From NCBI GenBank assembly GCA_002269645.1, contig NIVC01002176.1, positions 1 through 64,000 of the forward strand: a stretch of 64,000 bases of DNA, in the 5' to 3' direction. The notes beneath the pieces are model-generated. The model did no database searches. It was not told the DNA's origin and saw only the letters and a list, made by a program, of their open reading frames with translations. Made by a program: the position numbers and the translations under genes. Origin of the DNA: Macrostomum lignano. Lineage: Eukaryota. Positions 12,061 through 64,000 of this stretch are shown here, one piece after another; within the stretch, counting starts at the first letter, position 1; each line of letters begins with the position of its first letter.

Positions 12061-12098
12061 GAGAGAGTAGAGAGGAGAAGAGAGATGGGAGAGGAGAG

Positions 12099-12163
<65 letters not shown>

Positions 12164-12195
12164 GAGCAGAGAGAAGCGAGAAGAGATAAGAGAAA
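12061..12195. repeat. (GA)n microsatellite / purine tract, preceded by (CAG)6 at 12044-12061
   Basis: Pure AG dinucleotide run ~12101-12158 inside a G/A-rich tract. Confidence 0.97.
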
Positions 12196-16160: not shown

Positions 16161-16179
16161 AGCAGCAGCAGCAGCAGCG

Positions 16180-21537: not shown

Positions 21538-22030
21538 AGGGCGCCCACTAAGAGACAGGGGCGCCCACAAGAGACAGGGGCGCCCACTAAGAGACAGGGG
21601 CGCCCACTAAGAGACAGGGGCGCCCACTAAGAGACAGGGGCGCCCACCAAGAGACAGGGGGCGCCCACTATAAGAGAGAGCGGCGCCTACCAAGAGACAG
21701 GGCGCCAACTAAAATACAAGGGGGCCCACCAAGAGACAGGGGTGCCAACTAAAATACAAGGGGGCCCACAAGAGACAGGGGCGCCCACACTAAGAGACAA
21801 GGGCGCCCAACAAGAAGACACCAAACAGTCACGTATTGGCGCCCCTCCCAGAAAGATTGCTTCGTGCCCCACTGCATGCAAACGCACAGTTATACACGTA
21901 AAGTCGATCAACTTACCACACGAGAAGTAGTACCAAAGAGCCTAGCTATAATTCGCCAAACCAATGTTTTTGATAAAAGTTAAAGTTAGTTTAATTTTAT
22001 CAGTTTAAACGAGAAAGTATGCCTTTTTTA
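21538..22030 (+). mobile_element. Second copy of a dispersed element carrying a short array of the 20-bp CACTAAGAGACAGGGGCGCC unit plus the same unique downstream sequence as 7780-7900
   Basis: Array at 21538-21810; ACTTACCACACGA..CCAAAGAG.CTAGCTATA..ATTCGCCAAACCAATGTTTTTGATAAA occurs at ~21910-21980 and ~7780-7850. Confidence 0.75.
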
Positions 22031-22710
22031 AGAATCGGTGTTGTTAGCAATAATTTTGGCCACCATTTTAGTGTCGCAGCGCCTTACATGTACATTTATT
22101 TTGCGCAGCAGGCACCATTTTAGCGACGCAGGCGAATTTCTCATATTGACAACGAATTCTCATAATCGGTACATCTTCAATCTAACTTTTCAGTGGATTA
22201 CGTAACTTTAAATTTGAAGAAGCTATTAAAAAAAAATTGTGTTATTTTTTGTAAAAAATAATAGAAAACAAAAAGTCACTTACGACGGCATACTTACTTT
22301 TTGCAAATAAAAAAATTGTTTAAATTTTTGTCAAGCAAACATATAAAACTTCAAATCAAGAATTCTTGAGCAATTCATGAACCCCGCAAAATTTTTTTAT
22401 TATTGAGCGATATAAACGATAGGCCTAAGTTGCACCCTTACCTTAGCATTCTTATAGTTATTTCTTAAGCGAATTACCAACTGTTAATAAAGTAACTTAA
22501 TAACTTTTTGGCTTTTGTTCATAATAAATAAGTCACTTTTATAATACCTCATAACAGAATTTGTGAACAAAAATCGGATTTAGCAGTTGTTAATCTTAGC
22601 CTAGCTTGCCTTAGGAGCCTATAGGCCTACTATAAAAACTATTTATCGACCCGCCCTAAGTAGCAGCTTTTTGCCTGTTATTTAGGTGTTAATTGAAGGG
22701 CCGAGTCACT

Positions 22711-44353: not shown

Positions 44354-47300
44354 ATTTGTTATGGATAGTTAAGTCTGTCTAGACTCTAGCCTAGGCTATA
44401 TACACTTCTGTGACTTCTAGAGCAGCAGATTTTGGAGGCTTTTTATTTAGTCAGGACTAGGCCCTATTATGGCAGTGCTGCTAAAAACAAAAAAGTGTGA
44501 CTAAATTCAAGCCAAATAGCAGAACTATAGTCTATACTATAGTCTATAAAACAAATACAGCTAGCACTAGGGCCTATAAACTAATATACATTAAATTAAT
44601 TGTCAGTCAAAAAATGAGTCTACTCGAGCTACATAAAAACAGCTGTCAGAAGTCAAATAAAGAACATGTAGGTAAGATTTAACAATGTAATTTGCTTGTG
44701 AACTGATCAACCAGAGATTAAACTGTGTTTCAACAAAATTCTATCCACACTCTAGACATACAGCCACAGTAGTACGGAAAGTAGAAGGCAAGAAAAATGA
44801 AAATATTTGGCAAGTTTATTTTCCAAGACTTTTACGTGTCTACTATAACAAAAAATAGCTTAAAATTCAAATATACTTTATAATTGTTTAAAAAATAACC
44901 ATATATTTTTATATATTAATAATATTTTTTTGTAAATTAAAACTAAAAAGTTTTTTTATACTCCGATATTTTAACCGTGGTTTTTTAAATTAATAAAACG
45001 CGCTGCGCAGCGGGGTAGTTCTCAAATTAAGGTCATGATGTTTTGGTACAGAAAAAAAAGTTTTTGAATAAAGTAATTATTTTGCAAAAACGATTCTTTC
45101 GTCAATTTAATTAAAAAACTGCCGTTAAAACCACAAGAAACCAAATATTTAAGACGAAATCTAGCAATTTGTTATTTTTCGCAACGGAAAATAAAACGAC
45201 CAAAAATTGTGAAATAATGCAAGTTTTCTTTTATTTTTTTATGAATTAGATACATCTTTTATTCTATGTTTACTATTTAATAAGTATTATTTCAATAGAA
45301 AATGTTATTTTTAAATCAACATTTTGTTTTTTTCGTATAAATTGCTTGTATTTAAAATTATCGCGTAACAAGAAACACCCGAAATAATTGATATTGTACC
45401 ACTCAAGAACTTAATTATTGTACTTAAACACCGAAATATGAAGCTTAAAATATACAAAACTGGTTTAGCTAAAAATTAGGCTTGCAAAATATGTCTTTTA
45501 AAGCATTAAAAGTTTTTTTGAATTAGAATATATATAGTAAACGAGCTAGGAAGCCATTTCTTTTAAAACCTAAAATGCATGTATCTTTTTTCGAACAGAC
45601 TTGCGTTTTTAAAAAAAATACTTCAGCAAGCATTTATATTCTGCAACATAGCTTTAATACTATTTTACTATTTTACTATACTATTTTCTTATGTAATTAG
45701 GCTGCATAACTACTAAAAGAACAGCTTATAAATTTAAATTAAATACTTTGGTCTTGGTAAGTTAATTAGCCTATTACAGACGTCTGACTCGGCAGCCACA
45801 TGGATCACTGCAATTGCTCTGGCGAACCTCTGTAATCGATTCTGGCCCTGCACTAGCTGTAATGCTCGGTATACAATTCGTCTCATTTGATAAATTACGT
45901 CGATGCCTGCAGAACTAACCACACCCAAAGGACCACTGCACATCTTAGCATTGTGGCACATACAATGATGCTGGTGTTCTGGCAGAGAAACAGGTAAAAG
46001 TGCAGCAAATGGCATTACATATCCGTCCGAGAGGTGTGCAGTTTACAGTGCTTTAGCCAATTGGGTCAGTAGAATTAAATCGATCACATTAGAATAAAAG
46101 TAGATGTTCGCTGTACATGTAACAAACCAATAGCAAGACACTATTGGATGTCTTTCCCTTCTACTGATGCTCGTACATCAGCTGGCTGTCTCCACAGGCC
46201 ACAGCTCATCGCATTCTCTGTTAACCGCCGCTTCAGTGCTGTCAGCCGCACTTAACTGTGTCTGGCCTCGGTATATAGAGTCAGTCCCAATGGAAAATCA
46301 TCATCTAAAACATATCTAAAGCGTAATTGTCAATCGAAGAGTAATATAAAATATAGTATGTCTGTTATGGTACTGCCATGACTAATCTGTTAAACACTTC
46401 AAAAATTCGTGTGGCAGCACTCTCTGTAGAGATTCCATCTTTCTGTACCATATTTAATATTACATTGCCAGCATCAATGGCAATTAAGTTTTTTCTTTTG
46501 TCTTTTTTCTTGTTAGTAGCTATATGCATCCAAAGGTGGAAAGTATCAACTGAATGTTTAAGTTGCTACATGTATATCTTTAATGAATTGCAGAACATAT
46601 GAGAATGAATTTAATGTTTCAAAAAAAATAATTTTTTGTGCTTCAGACAGCTAATTTCATTGATAATAAATCAGATACAAAATTGTTTTAATACTATTTC
46701 TTGACTAATCAAATCATGCAACTTTTTTATTATTCGTTACTCTTATTTTCTTTTCAGTTTCTACTACTCTCTTTCTTCTACTACTACTTTCTACTACTTT
46801 CTTCTACTCTTGTTTTGACTCATTATGTTTACTTGTAACTTACAATACAAATTTTAAATCAGTTGAAAAAATTGTGTGAAAACAACAAAAAACGACTGTT
46901 TTTAAGAGAAAAAAAGTCAATTTTATCTACATAAATCAAATTCTGTTTGTTCTGACTAACATATTGGGTGATCAATAGCAAAAATTCATCTAAATTACGA
47001 GCGTACATAAAAAAACATCCAAAAAACCTAACAATGTGCTGAGAAAATTTTTTTTCATAACTAGAGACAAAAAAGTGGTACTTTTTCTCATCCCACAGAT
47101 GAGGACTTTAAATTAAAATAACTTTGGTGTTACTTGCTTTGTTGTAGTCAGCGAAATCTCTCTTTGTTAGGTTAATTTTGTGCTATTGAAAAAAACTTAA
47201 AATTGAATTTATTTAACTTTTCTTTCTTAATATAGAATGAAACTGCCTTAATTGATACTTTAGTGTTAGATATGACTATCTTTCTTAAAAAACAGCAGAA

Positions 47301-48804
47301 AACGCAGCTATTAGCGTATTCTATCAACAGAACAAATTAATTAAAAGTGGATTTTTTTATCATTCATAATGTTACGTTTCTAGCAAAAATCGAAATAGCA
47401 ACATCTGCTTTGCAATCGAAAGAGTTAAATGGGTTCTAGGTTGTGCTAACCAAAGTTATAAATAACATTTATCAATTTTCTTCTTTAATAAGACCACGTG
47501 AACAGAATGTAGCTTCTCTAAAGTGGGTATTATAACTCGTGCGATAATAAAAATATATATCGAAAAATGAAATAGCGCACTCTGATGAGATTAACATCAA
47601 AAGTTCAATGTTAAAAAAGATTAAGACCCATGAGAGGCATATATTTTTTAAGTCCTTTTAGAGCTAAAATAAGAAAAGATTCAATATTTCAGGCTGATTT
47701 TCAAAAATATTTGTTTCACTGCTTACGACTAAACTTTGAGAACGACCCAGCGACCTCAATTTTTTTTAATTATCTAGCGTGCGCCTTATACTAGCCTAAG
47801 ACCATAAGCTGATGCCTTATTTTAAATATAGATCTCTAGAAAATAATGCAGTTTAGAATCGATCTTTATTTAACTAGGTTAGACAATATTTGCAGTTTTT
47901 ACTATTACTTTCTATAATCGAATGTACGATTGCTAGTACGCAATATCCTCGTTTTAATTGATATGCTGCTATTCATTTATCTACTTTTTAAATGCAACGG
48001 CGCCGGTACGTTTTAGGAATATAGGAAAATGAATGCAAGAAACAAAAAAATAGAATTTTTTCTTTCTTTTCTTTTTTGTTTAATCAAATTGCAGTTTTAA
48101 TGATGTTTGCGGTGACACGTTTCCGATTATCAGGGAATTATACAGAAAGATGGTAGAGTTAGTTAATTAATTGGGGGGGGGGCGGGGGCCGAAGTTGACC
48201 TCAGCCAGGCGCCCATTGTGAGACACGCTAGACGCCCACTAAGCCAGAGTGATGGAGCAGCTTCCTAAAACCAACTGGCGGTTAGCCATCCTAGTTGGGA
48301 GGCGCGAGTTAGGCCTGTGCTGCAAATAGATAGGCGCAATGAGTCAGTTAAGCGGAAGTGGGCCCGCGCCGGCCCAAACGAGTGTTATTTACAAGACATT
48401 AAATCAGGGGGGTTAGGCAAATTAAGAAAACGAGAGGGGTAAGTACGCGGGGGATACGCGACTGAGGAAAAAGGCAAGCTTGGGCCAATCAGAAGGCAGC
48501 GAGAGAGAAAGATAAGAAAACAAGAGTCAAGACTGGACTAGACAGAGGGAGAAAACAGCTGAGTAAACAGAGACAAAGGGCAAACGGTCGAACAGAAGAA
48601 ATTACTTGCAGCTGCGACACATGTACATTGAGGGGTGCTGGGGTGGCCTCACTTTGCGGTTTAGCGCGGTTTAGCGAGTGGCCGAATTCGGCGCCCACCC
48701 CAGCCTGGGAACATCCAAGCTTAAAAGGAATTAAACTATTTAAAAAATGCTGCTGATTTCCAAGTTCCTCAAATATTGCAATAAACATTCAAATCTCCGT
48801 TGCG

Positions 48805-51360
48805 ATGAAACGTAAAGCCTCCGGGGTTGAAAACAGACGCAAGAAAAAGCTTCGTCTTCTCGAGGAAAGCGCCAGAAGCCCAGTAGGAATTATAACTTTC
48901 CTAAACAAAACTTCTGGACATCCTGCTGCTGTTGAATCCGGCGCCCCTGCTGCTGTTGAATCCGGCGCCCCTGCTGCTGTTGAATCCGGCGCCCCTGCTG
49001 CTGCTGAATCCGGCGCCCCTGCTGCTGTTGAATCCGGCGCCCCTGCTGCTGTTGAATCCGGCGCCCCTGCTGCTGCTGAATCCGGCGCCCCTGCTGCTGT
49101 TGAATCCGGCGCCCCTGCTGCTGTTGAATCCGGCGCCCCTGCTGCTGCTGAATCCGGCGCCCCTGCTGCTGTTGAATCCGGTGCCCCTGCTGCTGTTGAA
49201 TCCGGCGCCCCTGCTGCTGTTGAATCAAGCGCCCCTGCTGCTGTTGAATCCGGCGTCCCTGCTGCCAGAGCCCATGCTTCTACCGCTGAAGATACTAGCA
49301 GGGGAGTTTGCATGATTGACTTCGGTTGCTGGTGGCCCTCTGAGTGAACACCTGAATGACCACATTCGTCTTAAGCTGCTTGACTCTGCCTGGTCGCCGT
49401 CAGCCAACTACTCAATGCCTTTACTCCACGCGCATTGTAAAGGGCAAGGCTGAAAAGCGCTATCTAAGACATGAGCACCTGCAGAAGCACAGCTTTCTAG
49501 CCTTCTCAGAAGCTCGATCTGGGCTTTTCTGTCGGTTCTGTGCGCTTTTTGGGCCAGCGTCTGGGGATGTACGCAACCAGCAGCTCCGCAACCTAGTGTC
49601 GAAGCCCTTGAGTAGGTACGACCATCTGTTTGGTGCAAACGGCTATGTCACCTCCCATGCTGCAATAGCGTATCACCAAGATGCTATGGCACGCGCGGCC
49701 ACCTTCAAGCAGCAAGCAGCAGCTCGCAGCGACGTGGTGAAGCAGCTGGACGAAGCACGGCAACGACAGGCAGCAGAGAATCGAAATCGACTGCGGCCAA
49801 TCGTGAAGACGCTTTTGCTCTGTGGAAGACAAAACATTCCAGTTTGCGGTCACCGCGACGATGGCCCGCTTTCAAGTGCCAACTCTGACACGAGTGACGA
49901 CAATTCGATGGTTTCAGGCAGCGGCAACTTTCGCGCTTTACTGCAGTTTCGTGTTGATGCTGGTGACGAAGCGTTGGAGAAACATCTCAAGAATTCAGCA
50001 GCAAATGCAACGTACATCAGCAAGACAATTCAAAACGAGCTCCTCGAAGCCGCTGGTTGCGTGATTCAGGAAACTCTGGCCACCAAAGTCAATGCAGCAA
50101 AATGTTTTTCTGTACTCATGGACAGAATGCGGGGTGAGTTCAATGGAGTTCAGGCACATGTTCGGCAGAAGTGTCCAGCAGCGTACTACATTCACTGCAC
50201 AAGTCACTGCCTAAACCTTGCACTCGTTCATGCCTGCCAACTGCCCCCAATTCGTAACGCAATGGGAGTTATAGGAGAAGTAACAAATTTCGTCAATTCA
50301 TCGGCAAAGCGGCTCGAGCTCTTTCAAAGAGTCACCGCAAGTGGCTCGTGCAGCAGCCGTCAGCGGAAACTGCTAACCCTGTGCGATACTCGCTGGGTCG
50401 AGCGGAATGACGCCGTGCTCGTATTTTCGCAGCTTTTCGCATCAATTGTAGAATTTCTTGATTTCTGCGAATCCGCCTCCGATTGCGATCCAAGAGCTGC
50501 TGCAAAGGCGCAGATGCTGAAGGCCGCCTGCACAATGCCGAACTTCATCGTGGCGCTGCATGTGATGGGTGAGGTGATGGCAGTAATCCGGCCTCTATCC
50601 AGCTTCCTTCAGAAAGTTAGTATCGATCTGTTTACAGCAAGCAAGCACATCGAAAACGTGCGTGTCACGCTGGAAAAGATGCAGGCAGAAGCCAGCACTG
50701 CCTTCAAAAGTATCTGGTCGTCAGCATCCGAAGCTGCAGCTGAAGCGGGCGTAGAGCTGCGCATCCCTCGTCGTAGAGGCTGTCAGCAGGGGCGTGGTGC
50801 TAGCGAAGACACGCCGGAGGAACACTTCCGTGCTGATGTGTACGAGCCATTCCTACAGCACATTCTGTCTCAGTTCCAGCAGCGCTTTGGGGACCAGGCC
50901 CAGCATGATGCTTTTCTCCAGTTAACATGTTTGCTTCCGAAGTACGTCCATTTATGTCAAAGACTTCGAGCTTGCACTGTCGCAGTTCAGCAGCTTTGTA
51001 GACACCAATGCAGTTGTTAGGGGCGAGTTTGCCTGCTGGAAAAGTATTTAGGAAAGGTCAAAATCTGCGGCTGCAGCCGACACTGCTATTGAGGTGCTGG
51101 CTAACTGCGATGCTGCATTTTTCCCTAACATTTTCGCACTGCTGAAAATTGCTGCAACTTTACCTGTCTCAACTGCAACTGTTGAAAGATCTTTTTCTAG
51201 TTTGCGACGCTTGAAGTCGTATTTGCGTTCTACCATGCAGCAGGACAGACTTGTCAGTCTGGCTCTGTTGCACACCCACCCTGAGTTTGCAGAGACTGAG
51301 GATCAGGTGATTGATCGATTTTGCAGCAGTGGTTCACGCCGTAAAGACTTTGTTATTTGA
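48805..51360 (+). mobile_element. Decayed hAT-superfamily transposase (THAP12/ZMYM1-like: TTF-type Zn finger, DUF4371-like core, C-terminal dimerisation domain)
   Basis: MKRK..RRKKK basic N-terminus; GLFCRFCALF; RPIVKTLLLCGRQNIPVCGHRD, GNFRALLQF, YISKTIQNELL; IHCTSHCLNL, LCDTRWVER; FPNIFALLKIAATLPVSTATVERSFSSLRRLKSYLRSTM. Frameshifts at ~49325, ~49420 and ~50955; TAG at 51049; in-frame core deletion at ~50123. TIRs not identified. Confidence 0.9.
48920..49262 (+). repeat. 24-bp in-frame minisatellite (14 x PAA[V/A]ESGA) inside the transposase N-terminus
   Basis: Direct repeats CCTGCTGCTGTTGAATCCGGCGCC in the frame of ORF 48805-49347. Confidence 0.95.
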
Positions 51361-53004: not shown

Positions 53005-54376
53005 TTTAGAGCTATTTAATGTACAGCGACTCGAGAGCATTTGATGATCATGCTGTGGTTTTTACGGTCGATAATTTCAATTTCGATAATTTCAGTGAGT
53101 CGTCGATCTAACCCTGGCGCATTGGTTGCACGTACACAGGAAGTTGGTCGTGCACAGCGCCTGGCTCTTGTACAGGTGCAGTTTAACCATTGTGTGCAGG
53201 TGCCTTTCAGTAAAACCGTTATTGCTTAGCAACGCTTAAGAATTTGTAGATGACTATATCCGGCACACGGGACCTTGTACCTTGTACTGTACAAGGTTTT
53301 CGGTACACTGGACTTCAGTCTTTCGGTAAAGTACGGATTGAAAACTCTGACACACTGTAGCTTCATTTTTCATTCAGAATACGTTCGGCGTTCGGAAAAT
53401 TTTAGCTTACATATATTACATTGGACAGATACATGTAACGCACTACTTTTGAAAGCACTAGTTCATTCTTCACGTACACATGTAACTCTGCGAACCAATT
53501 ATTTTAGGGCTCTGCTCTGATCGTAGCAAGACAAACTTGATGCATGCATATGCATGGAATATTCATGCATATAGTCGGGAGTCGCGAGTAGCCCTGACAC
53601 ACGCCTTTGACGATTTCGTTCCACAACCAGCGCTGAAAGGCGATTCTGCGCATTTCGGTGACTCCTAGGCCAATACTGTACGCACTCATACACGTACACC
53701 GCTCACACAGGGTATAGCTGTCGGACCCTGACTTTCTAGCTCAGCGGGCCCTGACTTATCATCTAACATGTAACACCCTCTGTGCAAGACGTGTGAGTCG
53801 CACACGACAACTCCTCGACAAACGACATATTTCGTGCACAAGCCCTTACATTCTCCCATCAACCTTGCGGTACATGTGTAAAATATATGTTTCTTTAGTC
53901 ACCTGCACGTATAGGTCAGCAACACAAAAATTAAAGATAGTACGCGCTTGTATTAACGTTTAATAACGAAATAAACATCCGCCTTGGCATCAGATTTGGA
54001 GATTTGACGAAAAGAAACAATTTGAGGTGTAGCATTTAAAATGCATACCTTTATACATGTAGTACATCTCGATCTCCACCTTGAGGTGCACTGCATCACA
54101 GCACACTGCAGTTGAAAGGTTTTTATTTTCAATTGTTAGGTTGAGTTTTTCGACTCTAAAGGTACCGCTCCGATTTCACAATTTAATTAGAGCGAGCACT
54201 ATTATTTTAAATAAGGCTCAACTGAGTTCATCCGCATGATGCTTCACAATTGTCATCCTGCTCTGGGGTCACTCTTGAGCTGCCAAGCCTCAGTCTGGGG
54301 GTTTCGCATTATTTAAATTCTTCAGATTTCAACTAAGTAATCATGACAAGTTCATTTAGTGAGGTTCAATCGGTAG

Positions 54377-56837
54377 TCACGACTGGTTGTGGCTGAGTGT
54401 TCTCAATACGCAAGAGTAAGTTGGAAGCTCGTCATCGTCTGGGTCTCCCAGATCCGCTGGATTGTCTGTAAATGTATTTTTGGTTTGCTCAGTAATATAG
54501 AGGTTAATAAAAGCCGGTAATAAAGCCGAGAACTTTACTTTGGAAGGTGTACGGAGGTGGAGCTTTGCTCAACGACGGCGTCCGGAGCAGCTGCTGCGGT
54601 GTTGTCGCGGTCGTCGCTGGGTGATCCTGAGCAGCGTAGCAGGGCGAGGCCGTGGCCGCCGATACTGATGGAGGAGTGGAATTAGGTGTCAGCTTCATCA
54701 ATAGCATGTTCAGTAGTTCAAATTATTAGCTCAGCGCAGTAATGCGCCTTTATTGAGTGCGCTCGTGGTCGCTATAACTTTTAGGCTGGTCTGGGGCTTT
54801 CGTGTGGCTCACGTCCATGAGGAATTCAAGGCCTGCACTGTACAACATGAATGAGCGCATGCCTACCGTTGCTCTTTGGTAATGACCTAGTGAAAATTTT
54901 TGTCCATGAGAAACAAGACACTTAACTCTACATTGCTTCAGTTCACCCAGTTGTAAAATGGGTGCCAGCATTTTTAGAATTGGGGTAATTGAGGGGGTTG
55001 TGGCGACCCCCAGTCCTTGGACTGAACAACCGTACGCAGCCTTCAGATGCGCCGCGCTATACATGTAGCTGCGGCTAAGCTGTCGGTTGCACATCTGGCC
55101 CAATTGGGGCAGGTGTAATCAATTAATATTATTAACCTTACTTGCAAACAAACAATTGATTGTGAACTTTCCAACTTAAGAGCAACTGTCAAAACACGCG
55201 TTAACAGCGACTGCTGTCGGTGATTTTCTTTCTGAAACAAAAAACTGCCTGGCGAGTGGCGACTCCTACATGCAGCCCTGTTGGCTTTCAACGCAATGTT
55301 GAACTCTCCGTTATTTCAGTTGTATAGCTTGATTTGGAACCCCAAACTTGTTACCGAAGTGCCGCCCATGTACATATACCTCGTAATAACAAAAGTCAAA
55401 CGCTCACAATCGATTTCGCTATAAGACGGTGGCAGAGGCGATTGGTGAAAATTTGGTTGCACCTGATGTCTAAAGCATGGTCTGGCCTCTGAAATATTTA
55501 TCGAAGAATGGAATTCTGGAGCCGAATTAAAAGTGCAAATCATATAAATTCAAACATTATATAGACTTCCTTCTATGACTCATTTACTCAGAATTTTGTT
55601 AACAGGCAAGGGGCTGTGTGCATCCTGGTGCAGTTTAAGCGACATTTTCACACAACGGCGAGAGGCATTACTGCCATTCCGCCGACTCCCCTGAGCATGC
55701 AGGTACACAGCGCGCGGATACGTACGCAGTCATACGCACAGGCACACACTCACACAGGAGTGTACAGCGCGGCCCTAACTTTATTTATCGTTAGGTATGT
55801 ACACTTCACTGTGCCTTGGGGTTTGACGCGAGCATGCAGAGCCAAGCCGAGAATCCAGTTTAGCCCCAATTAATGTGACTGCACTTGGAATCGAGCCTGG
55901 GCCGCTGGTACATCAGAGCGCCGCGCTGGGCCACTAAACGCTTACGTGCCCCCCATTTACTTAGTATATTTAAATGAAATATTATATATTAGCAATGCAT
56001 ACCTAAGACTCTAGTAATAACAGGCGCGCGCCTGCTAGAAATAGATGGATTTCTGCGCGACAGACACCGTTTCAGCTGCACCAGCAGGCAGGCAATGATC
56101 ACAGTAAGAAGAATTAATCCGCAAGACTTCAATATGTTGCCCATGACTTGTTCGTCGCCTGGCGAGTTGAACATTCTGAAGCCAGTTCGGTAATTAATCC
56201 GATAAAAAAGAGAATTTAATTTAATTGGCGCTTCACCACGAAAGCGTCGCCATCAGAAGCTCGAAAAGTCACACCGTCGAAAACTGATCTAGCAGCCACC
56301 ATCACAAGCTCGAAAGGTCACATCGTCGAAAACTAATCTAGCAGCCACCAACACAAGCTCGAAAAGGCACAAGCTCTAACCCTAACCCTAACCCTATTCC
56401 TAACCCTTTTCGAGCTTGTGTTAGTGACTGCTACACGTTATATGAGTTTTCGAAGATGTGAATTTTCGAGCTTATGACTTTTCGAGCTTGCGAAGGTTTG
56501 GTTACTTTTGTGATTTTTCGCAAACGATGAGATTTTTCAAGCATAGGACTTTTTGAGCTTCTGATGGTGGATGCTTTTCAACGATGTGATTTTCGGGCTT
56601 GTGATGTGAGTGGTTTTTAAGAGATATGATCATATTTTCAATGATGCTTACTACACCAACACCAAACTACTAGAAATATATATACAGAGCAATAAGCCTC
56701 GCACGGCACTAGATATTTGATTATTTACCCTGCATATGACTACAAGTATCCGTTGTTGCATACCCGAATAGATAGACATTTCCTGATAGCTTCTCGTTGG
56801 TGGCAGCAGCAGCTGTGGTTGTCCTGACAACGGCCAT
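54377..56837 (-). CDS. Predicted 189-aa single-pass membrane protein with three PY motifs (PPSY, PPPY, LPTY); exons 56764-56837, 56003-56175, 55408-55515, 54539-54664, 54377-54465
   Basis: Four GT-AG introns, all phase-consistent, no internal stop. TM segment CGLILLTVIIACLLVQL followed by KRCLSRR; each of the last three exons carries one PY motif; the three largest introns each hold a repeat element. Confidence 0.75.
54895..55095 (+). mobile_element. Partial copy of SINE family 1 (CORE-like body)
   Basis: CAAGACACTTAAC..ATTGCTTCAGTTCACCCAGTTGTAAAATGGGT..GGACTGAACA.CCGTACGCAGCCTTCAGATGCGCCGCGC matches the reverse complement of 59101-59260. Confidence 0.75.
55690..55945 (-). mobile_element. 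SINE family 2 copy (tRNA-like head)
   Basis: The - strand begins with a tRNA-like stretch containing a B-box-like GGCTCGATTCC; the body is shared with 62550-62750 (CACACAGGAGTGTACAGCG.GCCCTAACTTT..ATGTACACTTCACTGTGC..AGCCAAGCCGAGA). Confidence 0.6.
56235..56615. mobile_element. Foldback (long imperfect inverted repeat) element with central (CTAACC)n
   Basis: Left arm CCATCAGAAGCTCGAAAAGTC / CACAAGCTCGAAAAGG is mirrored by CTTTTCGAGCTTGTG / GACTTTTTGAGCTTCTGATGG; core CTAACCCTAACCCTAACCCTATTCCTAACCC at ~56376-56406. Confidence 0.7.
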
Positions 56838-57334
56838 TGTCTTCTATTAAACTATTACTGTTCGAATTCACACGTACTTTCACGCGACGAGACCTGGAAG
56901 TTTGTGTTCAGTTCGACAAGAGCTTTCATTATGAGGTCAAACCAGCCCTCTTTACCAATTAATAGCTAAATATATCCCATAATTCTCGATCCTTGCATTC
57001 TCACAGGCCCCTGTGGTTTCATTGGGCGAGAGCAGCAGTTTTCATAACTATCGATTAAAAAATGTGCTCACCCTCCATCACCCTCTCAACAACTGCACTC
57101 TCTCCAGTTCCTCTTTCATGCCAGTCAGGCCAGCTGGGAAACCGCCTCCCCAGAGGCCTACTGGGGGCTAATGATGACAGCTGCTGGGTCCCGATGCTGT
57201 GTCGGATTTCGCCTCCACCCAGCGCTCTGGTCGGTGGCAGTGTCGGATTACCATTGCCCTTGTATTCTTACTCGACTCTTATCTACATTGGGCGTGTGCA
57301 GCGCCGTCAATAAATTGAAAACAAGACCAAGTGT

Positions 57335-57690
57335 GCTATATGGGGGTGCTTGCTATCTGGAGGTGCTTGCTATTTGGGGATGCTTTCTGTCTGGAGTTGC
57401 TTTGCTACCGGGGATGCTTGCTATCAGGGGGATGCTTTCTGTCTGGAGTTGCTTTGCTACCGGGGATGCTTGCTATCAGGGGGATGCTTTCTGTCTGGAG
57501 TTGCTTTGCTACCGGGGATGCTTGCTATCAGGGGGATGCTTTCTGTCTGGAGTTGCTTTGCTACCGGGGATGCTTGCTATCAGGGGGATGCTTGCTTTTT
57601 AGGGATGCTTGCTGTCTGGGCTTGCTTGCTATTTGGGGATGCTGGGTATTTAAGGGGATGCTTGCTGTCTGGGGGATGCTTTCATTTAGA
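57335..57690. repeat. 52-bp minisatellite built from GGGGATGCTT subunits
   Basis: About four near-perfect 52-bp units flanked by degenerate shorter subunits. Confidence 0.92.
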
Positions 57691-58498
57691 GGGAATGTCT
57701 GCTATCTTTGTGAAGGCTTTATTTTGTGTATTTTTGGTACTTTTAGAAAAAAAGAGAATCATATAGCAAACACCTTTATCCGGGACAATTTTTGTCCGAG
57801 ATTGATACAAGGCTGGGAGCTTCAAATCAATAATTTCATGAAATAGATCAAATTTCTACGAAGTCTAGTATATTCTAGTATATTCAAGTCGGTTCCGTGA
57901 TCCGGTCTTTCCAAGAATAGCCATGTCAAAGAAGCAATTGCATGTTTAGTCGGATAAATTCACTGATTTCAGTGACATCACCGTAGGATTAAGGAAGCCC
58001 CGCCCACCCAACTCGTCCTGAGATCTGCTAATCCACTTTGATGGACTAATACGAGTGCAGGAAAATTGCTTGATTTCAACACGAGTTGCTGCTTTTTTCC
58101 CCGTTTCTGCGATAATTAAGAAAGGCTGCTTCCTGACCATATAAAGTATCTTGCTTTTCTATTTATTAAAATAATAGCTCATACAACGTAAGAAGCTTTC
58201 AAATTTTTTTTCCGAGGCAGAAGACGATTACATGCAAAGCTCATTGATTTCAGTTGAAGGTTATACCTCGAAGTAACAGTTTATTAAATTTTCATGCCGC
58301 CGAAAGTACTAGTGTTCCAATGTACGAGCCAGGTGTATAGAGACAGAACACTCCTCCAAAATGCTAAATTCTCAGATAAAGCACGAATGCATGCTCAGAT
58401 AAATCAGCCTTTGTAACGTGAAGGGTCTTCATTATTCCGCACAATTTGGTACAACGCAACAGCCGCTGCAGAATAAGCGCACACAACAACACTCAACA

Positions 58499-61400
58499 AT
58501 GGTCGCGCTAATAACAACTTGTCAGATCCTTCTCTGTCTCAGTGCTCTGCCCCTGCCGGCAGTCCTGGCCATAGACAGCGGGCTCACCAGCCATTTCAGA
58601 CTCTGGCTAAGCAACAACGGGTTCAATGCCGCAGCTCTGGCCAGAGACGACCTCGCTGCTGCTGCCAGTGGCGGAAGCTTCGGAGGTCGCCGAGCTGCCA
58701 CCGACAGAGTTACACGCGATCCGGCTATCTTTGTACACGGCAACTCGGATCGGGCGTTGGGCGGCGAAATGGGAGGCTGGACTAAGGCTGTGGCCTATTT
58801 TGAGAGCCGAGGTGAGACTGCTACTTGATGCTTTGTATCAGACCTCTCAATTACAGTTCACAATGTTCGAGCATTTTTATTAACTAACACCTTGGGCAAC
58901 GAATCCGTACATGTAGTTTTATGGTCTTTAGGCGTTCCTTTAATAACAAAGAACTTGAAATCTGAAGTGTTTTATGGCCTTTTCTCAAGTCAATAGGGCT
59001 TATACTAGTGATTTGTCAGCCTTCCAAACTGTCTGTGAGTGAGTCAGGTATGAGTATGACTATAATAGGCACCAAATACTTCATATTTCTTACTTTAATA
59101 TGGCTACATGTGCAGCTGACAGCTCAGCCGCAGCTATTGCGCGGCGCATCTGAAGGCTGCGTACGGCTGTTCAGTCCACAACCCATTTTACAACTGGGTG
59201 AACTGAAGCAATAAAGAGGTAAGTGTCTTGCTCAATTAAGGACACAAATTTTTCCGAGTACGTCAAGAGTCGAACCCCCGACCTTCCAGTCATGAATCCG
59301 ACGCTCTAACCACTCGGCTACAACCCTAGAGTAAAATTACTTCGTATACTTGTTATACAAACATGCGTGTTATTTGACAAAAATGTCGGCTATATTTTTT
59401 ACTGTCTACTTGCGAGTAGGTGCAAAGCAGCTTCTCTGTCGTGAAGGAATGGTGGTTGACTTTATCAAAGCATTAAAAAGGAGTTTAACATTAATTCAAG
59501 CTGCCAGGGGACTGAAATGAGTCAGAATTTTTCAGTAAATCAATCAAGTTACGACTAAAAAAAACAAAACGACAAAAATTTTCGTGACCCACAATTTCTA
59601 TTGACTGCATTTTGGATCATTCAGCCAGTCAGTCAGTCAGTCAGTCAGTGTTTTGACAATTTTTACTAAGGCCGTGCTGTGTTGTTTTCACCATCCATTT
59701 ACCCCGCTGCTTGACCGCGCTTGTCTCTTCGTCTGTTGTGTGTCAAGAAAAAGCCGGCGTTTAAAACAAACTCCGCATTCCCACAGCTACGGCCTCTGGT
59801 CGGTGAATGTCCCTACAAACCCCGATTCTCGTCCAGTTCAAGCTGCAAAGTTTTTTGGTGTAAGAAAGTGGGAATTCGAGTTTTTTTACAGAAAATCCAT
59901 TCCCGAGGCACAGCAAGACTAAGAAATTTTCGAATGTAGGATGGACTGGAGTGAATGCTATTAAAGTTTATCCACGATTTCTGACTTTTTTTCAATTATT
60001 ATAGCTTTCATTTCTTACCTGAGTGAAAAACAACCAGCTGTACTGCTGCAGATCTGTTAGGCAGCTGCTTTCGAAAACTAACCACAGGATAAGACCGTGA
60101 ATTGATTTGTTACTCTATGCAACAAGCTGAATTAAAACAAAACCTTCAACTCGTCCCTACTATATTTAGAAATTTGTTTTGCTGACAGCAGGGTTTACGA
60201 GCGTAGAACCCCAGGTAGATTTAACAGGTACTTCATGCCGCAAATAGGCTTCAACTGCTTCGAAAAAAAAACTTGCTTGTTTTTTAGCAATGGTTCCATT
60301 GAACAGGATGAAAGATGCTTTCTAGTGCTATCTTTCGAATCTCAAGGTTTCTTAGTAACCGCAATTTCAAAATTTGGTTGACATTGACAATTGCTTATTG
60401 AGCTTTAGTAAAACTGCCCAACTGTTTTACGTTGAAATTATCATTTGTTATAGTAACCTTTATATCGTCTTTAAACCAAAATTTTTAAATAGGCTACAGC
60501 TCAGCTGAGCTCTACGCAACCACCTGGGGCCCGGCAGACAAATCCAAGGCTCGAGAGCAGACTCACAGCTTTGCCTACGTGAGCCATATTCGGCAGTTTA
60601 TTCTAGCGGTGCTGCGATACACGGGCGCTAGGAAGGTGGACATTGTGTCGCACTCTATGGGAGTAACCCTGGCGCGTAAGGCTATCAAAGGCGGCCTACT
60701 AGATGGACAGAATCTGGGTGAACCGTTGACCAGTCGGGTGGACACCTTCGTTGGCATGGCTGGCGGCAACTATGGACTGACCAATTGCTTTTTGGCGTAA
60801 GTCTGGCCTCGATAGATAATCCGCAGTTTTTTTTTGGGGAGGGGCGGTTCAAGTTTGGGGCGCCAATTTTTAAGCTACAATTAAGGCATGTAGCTTAAGG
60901 CGTGTAGGGGTGAAAAATCAAGTTTAAAGGGCGCAAGCTTAGGTTTGGGAGGCGCAATATGTTCTATCAAACTATTTCGGGGAGGGGGCGTCCGCTTAGG
61001 TTGCATGCTTAGTTAAGAGACAATGTGCGCGCATAAAGTTACATACTCAGATTTCTGTTGATGTAAATCAAAAACCCGAAAGGGACTTCATGACTTAATA
61101 CCGACAAAGCAACATTAGCGTAATTGTGAAGGCGAGATTTCTTGACTGGACATCCGGCTCAGTGCCATAGACAAAACTGTGCTCCCGGTTTCTTTTCAGT
61201 CCACTATTGAAGACATGCAACAGCCGGGACGGCTTCTACCCTGGCGTGTTCAACCCGCTGCTCCAGCAGGTAACCGGCCGGTCGCGGTTCCTCAACGACA
61301 TGCTGCAGAAGCCGGGATTCGAGGGCGCCCACCGCTATGCAATCTGGTCGGTTGATGACGAACTTCTCACCCTGGGCTGCATTGTGTACACCACTGTGAC

Positions 61401-61515
61401 CTGCCGTTTCCCAGGCATGACCGCTGAGAAGAGGCTGACGGGAGTGAAGCACCTCGAGGTGAAGAATGCCTATAATGTGTATTACCGGATGGTCACCGAT
61501 CATGTGGTTCCATGA
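58499..61515 (+). CDS. Secreted lipase, Lipase_2 (class 2) family; exons 58499-58811, 60493-60796, 61200-61515; 310 aa
   Basis: Phase-consistent GT-AG introns; hydrophobic signal peptide; [10 protein letters not shown] oxyanion motif, [29 protein letters not shown] nucleophile elbow, [14 protein letters not shown]-terminal D and H candidates. Confidence 0.92.
59101..59322 (-). mobile_element. Near full-length tRNA-derived SINE (family 1) with CORE-like domain, in lipase intron 1
   Basis: - strand: TGTAGCCGAGTGGTTAGAGCG (A box)..GGGGGTTCGACTC (B box), then GTGTCCTT..GAGCAAGACACTTACCTC..TTCAGTTCACCCAGTTGTAAAATGGG, resembling the MIR/CORE domain as I recall it. Confidence 0.8.
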
Positions 61516-62549
61516 ATGCCTATTGACATCTTGGCAATAAATGCACTTCTGATTCAATCTATTATATAATTGTTCAGCGGCTTTTATTCTTATTTTATGT
61601 TTGCAGAAAGAAAACCTAGCAAAAGTATACCCACAGCAACATTGAAAAGTCGCCATCACAGAAGATTCCGTCTGTCGTCGCCAATTTTGAGAGTGCAGAT
61701 GAAGTCTCTCAATCTTGCGAGTGACGCAACTCAGCTACGGCAGACCTGAGTTGAGGATGAAGTGAGAGGGGCGGTGTGCGAGGGTTGAACGGATTAAAGC
61801 CACCCCAATCAGTTTCAAAATAATCCAAGAGAAATTGCTCACTCGCGCATCAAGTGACGACTTTTCAATATTGCTGAGTATAAGAGGCTCAAATGCGGAC
61901 TTAGCGACAAATATGCTGATTAGGTCACCACTAGACAACCATGAGCAATCGGCACATACACATGTAGATAAGCTACAGAAACCCATTTTTTCTGTATCAC
62001 CATCATTTTCAGTAGTCGTTTTGATTATATTCTCATACTACGAGCGTACAAGCGGAACCTGTAGATATCCAGTTTGCATCTAAATAATTTACACACAGCT
62101 GTATCTAAACTTCTAAGCCAAAGGTAGTACATTCTCGTAATATTTTTTTTGAAAAAAACTTTAAAAACATCTCAAAATTTGACCAACTATTCTCGTTTGA
62201 GTCATGATTCGCGCATTGTGACGCCTACGCTCTTCTAGTTGACGTGGGGTGCTTGCGCGCTTGTTTTGACCTTTGGCCTCTAGGTTCTGGATGGTCGCTA
62301 GTCGATTGGCTGGGTTGTGGCGCCCCTCTCTCTCCTCTCTCTCTCTCTCTCTTGTACCCCTTGATTGCGACCTAGCACCTCCTCAACTCTCTTCCCCCTT
62401 TGTCTGTGACCATCCTTCTGATTGGCTGATTGCTCTGATTGGCTGGGCTTTGCTGTCGTCTGTTTTCTCTTTTTGATTTATAGAGGCAGTTAGCTGTGCG
62501 CACCCCGGCGCACATAAGTGACATTGTCACACTGGCCCATTCTGCCTAC

Positions 62550-62752
62550 TCCCCTGAGCAGGCAAACAGTCACACAGGAGTGTACAGCGGCCCTAACTTT
62601 TTATCGTCAGGCATGTACACTTCACTGTGCTTTCTGAGTTGCCTGTCAAGGACGTTATTTTCACGACCAAAGCCAAGCCGAGATTCCCATGTAGCCCCAA
62701 ACTAAATGTGACCATGAGAGAAGCACACTAGACCACTTGGATACGCCACTGC
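62550..62752 (-). mobile_element. Second copy of SINE family 2, head partly deleted
   Basis: Body matches 55740-55880; - strand starts with an A-box-like GTGGCGTATCCAAGTGGTCTAG. Confidence 0.6.
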
Positions 62753-62899
62753 TCTCTCACCGCTTCCCCGATTACTATTTTTATCCCCTCTGGCTGCTCC
62801 ACTAACTTTGGCTCGTGTGGCGACATCCTGAGTGATTGATTCTTTCCCACTTGGCGTGTGTTAACAATGTGTCATTGCAAAGACTCAATCTACTGCATG

Positions 62900-64000
62900 T
62901 TAAAATTGGAACTCCAGTGATTCATAGTTACTGGCACTGGGAGGTGGAAGCGACCCCTGTTGCCACAAAATGTTTATTTGGCTGCTTGATGGTTACGATT
63001 TGTTTGAATAATTTCTGCGCAAATGCCAGAAACCTCTCCAGACACAGAAAGAGTAGGGGGATAGAGATAGAGAGAGAAAGCAGTAAATTGACAATAAATT
63101 AGGAGTGCACTTGGCCCAGTGAATGCGTAGCTTAAATATCGCAAAGCTGAAAAACTGGGAAGCAGAAAGGAACACAACGGCTAAAAAGCCATTGCCAAAA
63201 ACGGATGTAGATCGGGAAACCATGGCTGACTGGGTTATACTTTTACCATGGCTGATACAGACTTCGAAATCTGAAGTGAAGCAGTTCGATGATTCATCCT
63301 TTCTAGCCAGAGATCCGTCCTTGATATGCCAGGTCGGGGTTCAGGCAGACAACTTCATCTCAGTAGGAGGCTGGGGATTATCGGAGATTGGAGCGAACTC
63401 CCCTATCTAGCGTGGGTGGAGCGGTCGTTAGGACATCAGAAAAAAAGTTTAAACGCTCATTAGTTCGGCAGTAAAAACGGTTGGAAGAAGATATGCGCAT
63501 TGAACGGAGAAGGCAGCAGTGGAGGACATTAAGCTATCGAGGCTATAGAATGACGGGATTTGCAAGGAGGACACGTTAGAAGATTATCACACCACAATCA
63601 AGCTGGGAAGCAGATATTGCACTCCACCCGATGCCGCCCTGCATTCCGCCTGCTATTATTGATCCCAGGCGGGCAAATTTCGGTCGCTCACCCTTGGCTA
63701 TGCGGCCTTCTGGAGGCGAATGGAACTCGTAGGACAGGGGAGACGGTTATAAATGTCGGCAGGGGTGGGGGAGATACGAGAGAGGGTCAGTCAGTGGATG
63801 GAGGGAGGTTCCGGTCGGCGGCAATTGAACAGTTTTTTGGTATAGTTGGCAGCCTGGCTAGGGCGATCTGGAACGCCCACCCTCCCTCGCTCTCCTTTTT
63901 TTCTCCTGGGCGTTTTGCGCAAATCATATTTCGCTACGGGGTTCCGAACATCCTCCCTTTCCATTGCGCCCAAGCTTATCCGCTTGGCAAATGCAATCTA
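62900..64000 (-). mobile_element. Highly degenerate LINE RT remnant, probably extending beyond the window
   Basis: Stop-riddled - strand translations such as HGFPIYIRFWQWLFSR and TGPSALLIY loosely resemble RT motifs; no YADD seen. Confidence 0.3.

What the first reader, a model, noticed from the sequence alone, without database searches (positions are those of the whole stretch)
54377..56837. Hidden Commissureless/PRRG-like membrane adaptor with three exon-encoded PY motifs
Spliced product: MAVVRTTTAAAATNEK..CGLILLTVIIACLLVQLKRC..PLPPSYSEI..SPCY..APPPYTF..ELPTYSC..stop. It has no signal peptide, a short Thr-rich N-terminus, one TM helix with a juxtamembrane Cys and basic residues, then PPxY, PPxY and LPxY. 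Established: these motifs bind Nedd4-family WW domains; Drosophila Commissureless (PPCY + LPSY), PRRG4 and PMEPA1 share this layout and route receptors such as Robo for degradation. Inference: an unannotated Nedd4 adaptor, possibly a Comm analogue outside insects, with one PY motif per exon allowing tuning by alternative splicing.
Basis: partly seen in the sequence, partly recalled or inferred. Interest (0 to 1): 0.7.

Follow-up and report, generated by a model that had tools for sequence, protein, structure and literature searches.

The report
Unannotated flatworm PY-motif membrane gene
A probably real but unannotated and so far orphan five-exon gene of the flatworm Macrostomum lignano encodes a small single-pass membrane protein whose cytoplasmic tail carries three Nedd4-type PY motifs. 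It fits the generic class of ubiquitin-ligase adaptors, but nothing ties it to Commissureless or Robo.

Summary
On the minus strand, 56837..54377, five exons joined by four GT..AG introns close into a 180-aa ORF. It has a 42-aa N-terminus without a signal peptide, one TM helix, six K/R in the next 15 residues, then PPSY, PPPY and LPTY, one per exon. The window is Macrostomum lignano scaffold NIVC01002176.1.

This is unlikely to be chance:
- Only 1/400 (strict) or 3/120 (lax) shuffled windows allow such a chain, and the real window has no other.
- PY motifs are about 190-fold enriched over non-coding translations.
- The positive-inside pattern has P≈0.006.

Support for a working gene is otherwise thin:
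- Codon bias is marginal (P≈0.04).
- Three of four acceptors are weak.
- No Pfam family, no PDB match and no homologue turned up in two very large protein searches.
- No annotated product matches, and no transcript evidence was reachable.

Best reading (about 0.55): a lineage-restricted type-III membrane protein that recruits, or is targeted by, Nedd4-family E3 ligases. That makes it a new member of a known kind. It resembles yeast Rcr1/2, Comm, PRRG4 and PMEPA1 in architecture only. Membership of the Comm, PRRG, PMEPA1 and NDFIP families was tested where possible and not met. The Comm/Robo analogue idea is speculation (about 0.05).

The parts
56764..56837 (-). Exon 1 (74 nt): ATG at 56837..56835, residues 1-25 (MAVVRTTTAAAATNEKLSGNVYLFG), donor CGG|GTATGC. 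This is the least secure exon, and the gene may instead start at Met26 in exon 2.
   Evidence: Codon score beats GC-matched null segments (P=0.02). Donor is in the top 2.6% of GTs. In-frame TAG at 56846..56844.
56003..56175 (-). Exon 2 (173 nt): residues 25-83. It holds Met26 (56174..56172) 1 nt after the acceptor CTTCAG|, the TM core CGLILLTVIIACLLVQL (56123..56073), and then KRCLSRRNPSISSRR. Donor is TAG|GTATGC.
   Evidence: Kyte-Doolittle 19-residue maximum 2.64; 6 K/R in the 15 aa after the TM. The acceptor fits the published M. lignano trans-splice motif [T/C]TNCAG (PMC8629364) but has a poor pyrimidine tract.
55408..55488 (-). Exon 3 (81 nt, phase 1-1): residues 83-110 with PY motif 1, PPSY, at 55432..55421, in the context PLPPSYSEIDL (also YSEI = YxxPhi). 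Donor is ATT|GTGAGC.
   Evidence: Codon score is not better than null (P=0.77). This is the only donor matching GT[GA]AG.
54539..54664 (-). Exon 4 (126 nt, phase 1-1): residues 110-152. It holds SPCY (non-canonical) and PY motif 2, PPPY, at 54560..54549. The acceptor ctcctccatcag| is the best of the four. Donor is AAA|GTAAAG.
   Evidence: (acceptor in the top 3.8% of AGs). GC is 0.65 against 0.46 and 0.33 in the flanking introns.
54377..54465 (-). Exon 5 (89 nt including TGA at 54379..54377): residues 152-180. An acidic cluster DPDDDE is followed by PY motif 3, LPTY, at 54427..54416, in the context ELPTYSCVL (YSCV = YxxPhi).
   Evidence: It is preceded by a 73-nt intron of 33% GC.
56246..56606 (.). 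Fold-back repeat element inside intron 1: 49-nt units in inverted orientation around a (CTAACC)5 core at 56376..56407.
54893..55100 (.). Dispersed-repeat fragments inside intron 3 (54893-54963 and 55018-55100). A further fragment lies in intron 2 (55739-55817). None of the exons overlaps repeats.
   Evidence: BLASTN against the rest of the window and against L001.
54122..54187 (-). Possible poly(A) signals downstream of the stop codon: ATTAAA at 54187..54182 and AATAAA at 54127..54122, that is 190 and 250 nt after the TGA. Unverified.
   Evidence: Read directly from the sequence. Such hexamers are frequent in A/T-rich DNA, so this is weak evidence.
57334..57681 (.). A 17/52-nt minisatellite in the ~1.6-kb spacer between the candidate's 5' end and the divergently oriented Lipase_2 gene, which starts at 58499 on the + strand.

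Best explanation
This is a genuine, lineage-restricted protein-coding gene of Macrostomum lignano that the public annotation misses. It encodes a protein of about 180 aa, or 155 aa if translation or trans-splicing starts at exon 2.

The protein inserts as a type-III (N-out, C-in) single-pass membrane protein. Its short Thr/Ala-rich N-terminus faces the lumen or outside. A Cys-flanked TM helix is followed by a basic juxtamembrane stretch and a disordered, Pro/Ser/Thr-rich cytoplasmic tail.

The tail presents three [L/P]PxY motifs. Two are in the extended PPxYxxPhi form and double as YxxPhi sorting signals, and one is preceded by an acidic cluster. These motifs would dock WW domains of Nedd4-family HECT E3 ligases. 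The protein would then act as a membrane-anchored adaptor that brings the ligase to neighbouring membrane cargo, or be a ligase target itself, driving ubiquitin-dependent endosomal and lysosomal sorting.

Shown here: the ORF, the splice-compatible structure, the motif layout and its non-randomness.
Inferred: expression, topology, WW binding and any cargo.
For: - Structure and frame closure with four GT..AG introns. Intron number and sizes (588, 514, 743 and 73 nt) are typical for the species, which averages 4.9 introns of about 1.1 kb (PMC5730564).
- Chance assembly is rare: 1/400 strict and 3/120 lax shuffled windows, and no other locus in the real window.
- PY motifs are about 190-fold enriched over non-coding translations, with tail shuffle P=1e-4.
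- The positive-inside rule is met: 6 K/R after the TM against 1 before (binomial P=0.006), and 0 of 16 chance TM-like segments reach 5.
- Exons are GC-richer than introns (0.47-0.65 against 0.33-0.46), and the codon log-likelihood is above the GC-matched null (P=0.039) and within the range of real neighbouring genes.
- No exon overlaps repeats, whereas the introns carry repeat and transposon fragments.
- All four acceptors are CAG, as in about 60% of true M. lignano acceptors. Donors rank in the top 2-10% of all GTs.
- PY motifs on single-pass membrane proteins bind Nedd4-family WW domains in Comm, PRRG4 and yeast Rcr1 (PMC12101832, PMC5578492).
Against: - No transcript evidence could be reached.
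- No protein with these exons is in the 5.8-billion-protein collection, which does hold the GenBank annotation of this same scaffold (P0121).
- Exon 2 finds nothing among 1.84 billion representatives, although a congeneric Macrostomum transcriptome is represented (L003).
- There is no Pfam or PDB match.
- Codon-usage support is marginal. Exon 3 scores like non-coding DNA, and an antisense frame scores as high, apart from its stops.
- Three of four acceptors lack a pyrimidine tract, and only one of four donors is GT[GA]AG, against about 65% genome-wide.
- The GenBank annotation was filtered against transcripts overlapping repeats (PMC5730564), so absence from it is only weak evidence.
- The homology tool also seems to list only hits up to about 1.75x the query length.
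Confidence: 0.55

Rival explanations
1. There is no gene. The five 'exons' are short open stretches of non-coding DNA that a motivated reader chained through ubiquitous GT and AG dinucleotides, and the TM-like segment and PY motifs are coincidence.
For: - Each exon ORF is only 38-75 codons, which is ordinary for 45-50% GC DNA.
- Three acceptors score like random AGs, and only 1/4 donors is GT[GA]AG.
- The codon signal is marginal, and exon 3 is null-like.
- There is no annotation, homologue or transcript-derived ORF anywhere.
- At 0.3-2.5% per 64-kb window, a 760-Mb assembly would still hold tens to hundreds of such chance chains before further filters (inference).
Against: - The chain is unique in the real window and rare in shuffles.
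- Independent protein-level features not needed for the chain also fit. These are the basic cluster exactly on the C-side of the TM (P about 0.006), the extended PPxYxxPhi context, the acidic cluster before LPTY and the Pro/Ser/Thr-rich tail.
- PY density is about 190x background.
- The exon/intron GC contrast fits a gene, and repeats lie only in the introns.
Confidence: 0.3
2. It is a real gene, but the 5' end differs. Exon 1 is not part of it, the mRNA begins at exon 2 (SL trans-spliced at CTTCAG|A, 56176/56175), and translation starts at Met26. The product is 155 aa with a 17-aa ectodomain. Alternatively, the last intron is retained in some transcripts, giving ...PPPYTFQSKVLGFITGFY* without LPTY.
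For: - Exon 2's acceptor matches the published trans-splice motif [T/C]TNCAG and is followed 1 nt later by ATG.
- That acceptor is the poorest as a cis acceptor.
- 30-39% of M. lignano genes are trans-spliced.
- The exon-4 ORF runs on for 12 codons (after Ser replaces Asn152) to a stop if intron 4 is retained.
Against: - Exon 1 has the best per-codon score relative to the GC-matched null (P=0.02) and a decent donor.
- The SL's own terminal ATG would be out of frame with the ORF at this acceptor (read from the sequence; SL).
Confidence: 0.2
3. It is a functional counterpart of Commissureless/PRRG4 in a flatworm. It would be a neuronal endosomal adaptor that uses its PY motifs to hand Robo receptors to Nedd4 for degradation.
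For: - The architecture is shared: a short single-pass protein with cytoplasmic PPxY plus LPxY.
- ELPTYSCVL and PPSYSEIDL partly resemble the critical GLPSYDEAL-type extended motif shared by Comm and PRRG proteins (PMC5578492).
- Comm works as a PY-dependent Nedd4 adaptor for Robo1 (PMC12101832).
Against: - There is no detectable homology to Comm (Pfam) or any PRRG-sized protein.
- There is no Gla domain or Comm-like luminal domain.
- The acidic residues after the Tyr, a hallmark of LPSYDEAL, are missing from LPTYSCVL.
- The same architecture occurs in many unrelated adaptors with other cargos, such as Rcr1/2, PMEPA1, WBP1, VOPP1 and TMEM92.
- No expression or interaction data exist.
Confidence: 0.05

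Closest known systems
Yeast Rcr1/Rcr2 (Rsp5 adaptors)
   Same: Type-III single-pass membrane proteins with a very short luminal N-terminus, no signal peptide and a cytoplasmic tail carrying PY-type motifs that recruit the Nedd4-family ligase Rsp5 (PMC5578492; PMC7401822 listed). This is the closest match in overall layout and size.
   Different: No sequence similarity was detected. The Pfam library was searched and gave no hit at all; that it holds an RCR family model is from my own recollection, not checked here. These are fungal proteins, so the resemblance is convergent at best.
Drosophila Commissureless (Comm)
   Same: A single TM with cytoplasmic PPxY plus LPxY motifs, which bind Nedd4 and drive endosomal and lysosomal sorting (PMC12101832).
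   Different: - Comm has a much larger luminal N-terminal part (my own knowledge) and the GLPSYDEAL sorting motif. The candidate has a 42-aa N-terminus, and its LPTY is followed by SCVL.
- There is no Pfam Comm hit.
- Comm is known only from insects.
Vertebrate PRRG1-4 (PRRG4 = functional Comm homologue)
   Same: Short single-pass proteins with cytoplasmic PPxY and LPxY motifs that bind Nedd4-family WW domains (PMC5578492).
   Different: PRRGs have a signal or propeptide and an extracellular Gla domain. The candidate has neither, and there is no Pfam Gla hit.
PMEPA1 (TMEPAI) / LDLRAD4
   Same: A short ectodomain, one TM and a tail with two PY motifs, one in a PPxYSE[VI] context very like the candidate's PPSYSEI (from my own knowledge of the human sequence, not tested by alignment here).
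   Different: - They carry a Smad-interaction motif (PPNR), which is absent from the candidate.
- LDLRAD4 has an LDL-A domain.
- Proteins of that size were within reach, and none matched.
- Their known role is TGF-beta/Smad and AR regulation, not Robo.
NDFIP1/NDFIP2 (and yeast Bsd2)
   Same: Membrane-anchored PY-motif activators and adaptors of Nedd4-family ligases. Ndfip proteins target Robo in the mouse spinal cord (PMC6913780).
   Different: They have three TM helices, with the PY motifs in the N-terminal cytoplasmic part. There is no Pfam hit, and the topology is opposite.

Membership tests
Generic class: PY-motif single-pass membrane adaptors/targets of Nedd4-family E3 ligases | One TM helix with the PY-bearing segment on the cytoplasmic side | tested here: met
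   The Kyte-Doolittle 19-residue maximum is 2.64, at ILKSCGLILLTVIIACLLV. There are 6 K/R in the 15 aa after the TM against 1 before it, so the tail is predicted to be cytoplasmic by the positive-inside rule. This is an in-silico result only.
Generic class: PY-motif single-pass membrane adaptors/targets of Nedd4-family E3 ligases | At least one canonical [L/P]PxY motif in a disordered tail | tested here: met
   PPSY (102-105), PPPY (145-148) and LPTY (165-168). Enrichment P=1e-4 by tail shuffling.
Generic class: PY-motif single-pass membrane adaptors/targets of Nedd4-family E3 ligases | Physical, Tyr-dependent binding to WW domains of a Nedd4-family ligase | not testable with these tools
   This needs a pulldown or ITC with M. 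lignano Nedd4, Su(dx) or Smurf WW domains.
Commissureless family (Pfam Comm) | Sequence homology to the Comm family profile | tested here: not met
   hmmscan against Pfam-A at E<=10 gave 0 families. The same holds for the Met26 variant at E<=0.01.
Commissureless family (Pfam Comm) | Extended GLPSYDEAL-type sorting motif (LPxY followed by acidic and hydrophobic residues) | tested here: inconclusive
   ELPTYSCVL keeps L-P-x-Y-x-x-Phi-L but lacks the acidic residues after the Tyr. PPSYSEIDL keeps P-S-Y-x-E-Phi. The motif definition is from PMC5578492, and the comparison was made by eye.
Commissureless family (Pfam Comm) | Down-regulates Robo surface levels / required for midline crossing | not testable with these tools
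   This is a functional assay.
PRRG (proline-rich Gla) proteins | N-terminal propeptide plus extracellular Gla domain | tested here: not met
   There is no Pfam Gla hit. The N-terminus is 42 aa, Thr/Ala-rich and has no Cys or Glu cluster. There is no room for upstream exons, because the divergent Lipase_2 gene starts about 1.6 kb upstream.
PMEPA1/LDLRAD4 | Smad-interaction motif PPNR between the PY motifs, and detectable homology | tested here: not met
   There is no PPNR in the 180-aa product. No hit at E<=10 was found among proteins up to about 315 aa in 5.8 billion sequences. No dedicated family profile was available.
NDFIP/Bsd2 | Three TM helices with N-terminal cytoplasmic PY motifs | tested here: not met
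   The candidate has a single hydrophobic segment, and the PY motifs lie C-terminal to it. There is no Pfam hit.
Real M. lignano protein-coding gene | Canonical splice sites matching species statistics (GT[GA]AG in about 65% of donors, CAG in about 60% of acceptors) | tested here: inconclusive
   4/4 acceptors are CAG, but 3 of them have poor pyrimidine tracts. 1/4 donors is GT[GA]AG, and the others are GTATGC (twice) and GTAAAG. A real neighbouring acceptor (Lipase_2 intron 1) is similarly A/T-rich.
Real M. lignano protein-coding gene | Transcript / junction evidence or an annotated product | tested here: not met
   No matching product was found in the collection that holds this scaffold's GenBank annotation.
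Real M. lignano protein-coding gene | Purifying selection between paralogous copies or congeners | not testable with these tools
   A diverged second copy of the locus exists on NIVC01001580.1, at 92-98% identity in the reachable part. The stretch matching the candidate could not be fetched.

The most novel reading that the evidence does not exclude
The gene is real and is the flatworm's functional equivalent of Comm/PRRG4. It would be a convergently evolved or unrecognisably diverged PY-motif endosomal adaptor that delivers Robo, or another guidance receptor, to Nedd4. Its dosage of PY motifs would be tunable by in-frame skipping of the phase-1-1 exons 3 and 4. That would extend Comm-type receptor sorting to Spiralia.
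Probability: 0.05. Interest if true: 0.7.

Novelty: new member of a known kind. Interest (0 to 1): 0.3.

Why it matters
If the gene is real, it adds a lineage-specific, unannotated member to the large and polyphyletic class of small PY-motif membrane adaptors. These adaptors give Nedd4-family ubiquitin ligases their substrate specificity at membranes.

Such proteins are short, disordered and fast-evolving, so homology-based annotation misses them systematically. Macrostomum lignano is a transgenic and RNAi-tractable flatworm model, so the prediction is cheap to test.

It would not change how these adaptors are understood unless a specific cargo such as Robo were shown. If the gene is not real, the case is a useful calibration of how protein-like a chance splice chain can look.

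Tried and rejected
- **Pfam.** The 180-aa and 155-aa products gave nothing. This rules out recognisable Comm, Gla, NDFIP, WBP-1, RCR or Shisa domains.
- **Word-indexed search of 5.8 billion proteins.** It gave nothing at E<=10. The tool appears to list only hits up to about 1.75x the query length.
- **Exhaustive HMMER search.** I did not work around this and used the window-exact exon 2 instead, which gave 0 hits.
- **PDB sequence search.** Only two noise hits, at E about 0.5.
- **Paralogue comparison for a selection test.**
  - The second copy of the locus (NIVC01001580.1) was found through the neighbouring carrier gene, but the fetched stretch ends about 15 kb short.
  - A look-up with the nearby 554-aa ORF was not on record.
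- **Upstream ectodomain exons.** The six-frame reading of 56838-64000 shows only Lipase_2 exons on the opposite strand, with no Cys-rich or signal-peptide exon on the minus strand.
- **Rfam and tRNA scans.** Both were empty, so the SINE-like intronic pieces are not intact tRNA genes.
- **TE-derived exons.** Rejected, because the exons do not overlap any repeat detectable in the 91 kb at hand.
- **First chain-search script.** It timed out and was rewritten.
- **Generic polypyrimidine acceptor scoring.** It is probably too harsh for this species, because a verified Lipase_2 acceptor is A/T-rich too.
Full report
**What is there.**
The finding reads on the minus strand. Reverse-complementing 54300-56900 and joining the five proposed exons gives a 543-nt CDS that closes in frame. 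The exons are:
- exon 1: 56837..56764
- exon 2: 56175..56003
- exon 3: 55488..55408
- exon 4: 54664..54539
- exon 5: 54465..54377, including the TGA

All four introns (588, 514, 743 and 73 nt) are GT..AG. It has a 42-aa Thr/Ala-rich N-terminus without a hydrophobic signal sequence. One TM helix (CGLILLTVIIACLLVQL, residues 43-59) is flanked by Cys, followed by KRCLSRRNPSISSRR. The Pro/Ser/Thr-rich tail holds PPSY (exon 3), SPCY and PPPY (exon 4), and DPDDDE-LPTY (exon 5). SPCY is not a canonical PY motif, and the other three are. Exons 3 (81 nt) and 4 (126 nt) are both phase 1-1, so skipping either would keep the frame. That is a fact of the sequence, not evidence that skipping happens.

**Where it is.**
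The window is eukaryotic. I reconstructed a neighbouring mitochondrial-carrier gene by hand from window 22.7-29.4 kb. It hit 'BOX15_Mlig000233g2 [Macrostomum lignano]' at 100% identity, and exact peptide mapping confirmed my five-exon model of it. Contig look-up shows that the window is NIVC01002176.1:1-64000 of assembly GCA_002269645.1 (Mlig_3_7). A diverged second copy of the locus, at 92-98% identity in blocks, lies on NIVC01001580.1, as expected for this partly duplicated genome (PMC5730564).

The neighbours are:
- ankyrin-repeat ORFs (0.4-3.8 kb)
- a LINE (12.2-16.1 kb)
- the carrier gene
- a SMARCAD1-type helicase (30.8-42.9 kb)
- a 554-aa ORF without a Pfam match
- a three-exon class-2 lipase on the + strand from 58.5 kb (PF01674, E=5e-56)

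The lipase is transcribed away from the candidate, and only about 1.6 kb of minisatellite-bearing spacer lies between them. The six-frame reading of 56.8-64 kb shows no Cys-rich or signal-peptide exon on the minus strand. An upstream ectodomain exon, which would have placed the protein in a known family, is therefore unlikely.

**Is it more than chance?**
Short ORFs and GT/AG dinucleotides are everywhere, so frame closure alone proves little. I wrote a search for any chain meeting these conditions:
- ATG exon, internal exons and a terminal exon, at most 5 exons
- introns of 50-1500 nt
- a TM-like segment followed by at least three [PL]PxY motifs

With site-quality thresholds set at the candidate's own weakest donor and acceptor, the real window contains only this locus on either strand, and 1 of 400 block-wise dinucleotide shuffles contains any. 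With very lax thresholds (about a quarter of all GTs and about half of all AGs) the real window still has only this locus, and 3 of 120 shuffles have one.

Features not used in that search point the same way:
- [PL]PxY occurs 0.13 times per 1000 residues in the window's non-coding stop-free translations, against 3 in the 121-residue tail. Shuffling the tail gives P=1e-4.
- The 15 residues after the TM hold six K/R, against one in the 15 before. The binomial P is 0.006 at the background K+R frequency of 0.122.
- None of 16 chance TM-like segments had 5 or more K/R after them.

Exons are GC-richer than introns. No exon overlaps a repeat, whereas introns 1-3 carry a fold-back element and dispersed-repeat fragments.

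**Weak points.**
- **Codon usage.** I calibrated it on 2776 validated codons from this window. The candidate scores +0.03 bit per codon. Non-coding segments score -0.29, and real genes span -0.12 to +0.48.
- **GC-matched test.** Against GC-matched null segments the whole chain reaches only P=0.039. Exon 3 is null-like (P=0.77), and one antisense frame scores as high apart from its stops.
- **Donors.** They rank in the top 2-10% of all GTs. Only one is GT[GA]AG, the form found at about 65% of M. lignano introns.
- **Acceptors.** All four are CAG (about 60% genome-wide), but three have no pyrimidine tract. A verified lipase acceptor (aaccaaaatttttaaatag|G) is equally A/T-rich, so the generic model may be too strict.
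- **The start.** Exon 2's acceptor CTTCAG|A fits the published trans-splice motif [T/C]TNCAG and is followed at once by ATG (Met26). A 155-aa product lacking exon 1 is therefore a serious alternative.

**Homology and annotation.**
- Pfam gives no family at E<=10.
- The 5.8-billion-protein search gives nothing at E<=10.
- The exhaustive HMMER search, which only accepts window-exact sequence, found nothing for exon 2 among 1.84 billion representatives.
- PDB gives only noise.

The collection does contain this scaffold's GenBank proteins. It also holds at least one transcript assembly from a congener, L003, at 80-84% nucleotide identity in carrier exons. The gene is therefore unannotated and without a detectable orthologue.

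Two caveats apply. The GenBank annotation was deliberately stripped of transcripts overlapping repeat annotations. The homology tool also seems to cap hit length at about 1.75x the query.

The decisive comparison with the second genomic copy could not be made. I did not try to get round that.

**Most likely mechanism.**
Weighing these results, I put about 0.65-0.7 on a real coding gene. I put about 0.55 on the full statement that it encodes a type-III (N-out, C-in) membrane protein whose cytoplasmic PY motifs dock WW domains of Nedd4-family HECT ligases.

Two motifs have the extended PPxYxxPhi form (PPSYSEI, LPTYSCV). That form also reads as a YxxPhi endocytic signal, and an acidic cluster precedes LPTY. 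By analogy with established systems, such a protein either bridges the ligase to neighbouring membrane cargo or is itself ubiquitinated and sorted to late endosomes or lysosomes. In Comm, Nedd4 and Robo1 form a PY-dependent three-member complex (PMC12101832). PRRG4 and yeast Rcr1 work similarly (PMC5578492). The topology and motif layout are shown in silico, and everything downstream is inference.

**Comparison with known families.**
In layout and size the nearest are yeast Rcr1/2, with a short luminal N-terminus, one TM and a PY tail. Comm, PRRG4 and PMEPA1/LDLRAD4 come next. NDFIP has three TMs and the opposite arrangement.

Membership fails wherever it could be tested:
- no Comm profile match, and only a partial fit to the GLPSYDEAL-type motif
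- no Gla domain
- no PPNR Smad motif
- a single TM

It therefore works like these adaptors, probably, but is not a member of any of those families. The paper that defined the Comm/PRRG4 resemblance lists further unrelated families with the same layout (WBP1, VOPP1, TMEM92). This shows how unspecific the architecture is with regard to cargo. The remark that PMEPA1 routes Robo is not established.

**Verdict.**
If real, it is a new, orphan member of a known kind. Interest is modest (0.3) until transcript or comparative evidence exists.

Noticed in passing
window 12062-16998 (ORF 12196-16131, + strand): A LINE with an intact 1311-aa ORF (Exo_endo_phos, RVT_1 and RNase_H domains) sits in a 4.9-kb block that is absent from the paralogous contig NIVC01001580.1. 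It is therefore an insertion, or a deletion in the other copy, that arose after the duplication.
   Followed up: partly
window ~4200-7500; L001 8711-9115: A GC-rich (0.56-0.63) satellite array with a strong A-over-T skew. Its copies match each other at 20-nt offsets, and it is also present in the paralogous contig.
   Followed up: no
window 56246-56606 (intron 1 of the candidate): A fold-back element made of 49-nt units in inverted orientation around a telomere-like (CTAACC)5 core at 56376-56407. It may be a MITE or foldback-type insertion.
   Followed up: partly
window 57334-57681: A 17/52/104-nt minisatellite, open in several frames, lies in the spacer between the candidate and the divergent lipase gene.
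   Followed up: partly
window 58499-61515, + strand: A three-exon class-2 lipase gene (PF01674, E=5e-56) with a signal-peptide-like N-terminus. Its first intron acceptor is A/T-rich rather than pyrimidine-rich.
   Followed up: partly
window 48789-51020: A 554-aa ORF (49356-51020, +) has no Pfam match and is not on record as a called gene. It is immediately preceded by a tandem repeat that is open on both strands (48.8-49.3 kb). It may be a degenerate transposase-like gene.
   Followed up: partly
window 34400-35750 and 41000-42020 (introns of the SMARCAD1-like gene, - strand): Long tandem arrays stay open in all three frames for 300-500 codons, with repeated peptide units such as ...[31 protein letters not shown].... 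These arrays mimic long ORFs and would mislead ORF-based gene calls.
   Followed up: no
window 2560-2760, - strand: The ankyrin-repeat gene (ORFs 411-2651 and 2599-3765) changes frame here. A third frame also reads ankyrin-like (TPIHFAAQ..., GRTCCFTHAWAG). This suggests a short intron, a frameshift or an assembly error.
   Followed up: no
window 22000-26000 and 44000-48000: These blocks have about 31% GC, against 45-63% elsewhere, so compositional heterogeneity within 64 kb is sharp. The first two carrier exons lie in the first block and have unusually low GC3 (0.17-0.43).
   Followed up: no
L003 (Logan SRR28338166 contig): A spliced carrier transcript from a different Macrostomum species, 80-84% identical in nucleotides to the window's exons. 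It shows that congeneric transcriptomes are represented in the protein collection.
   Followed up: partly
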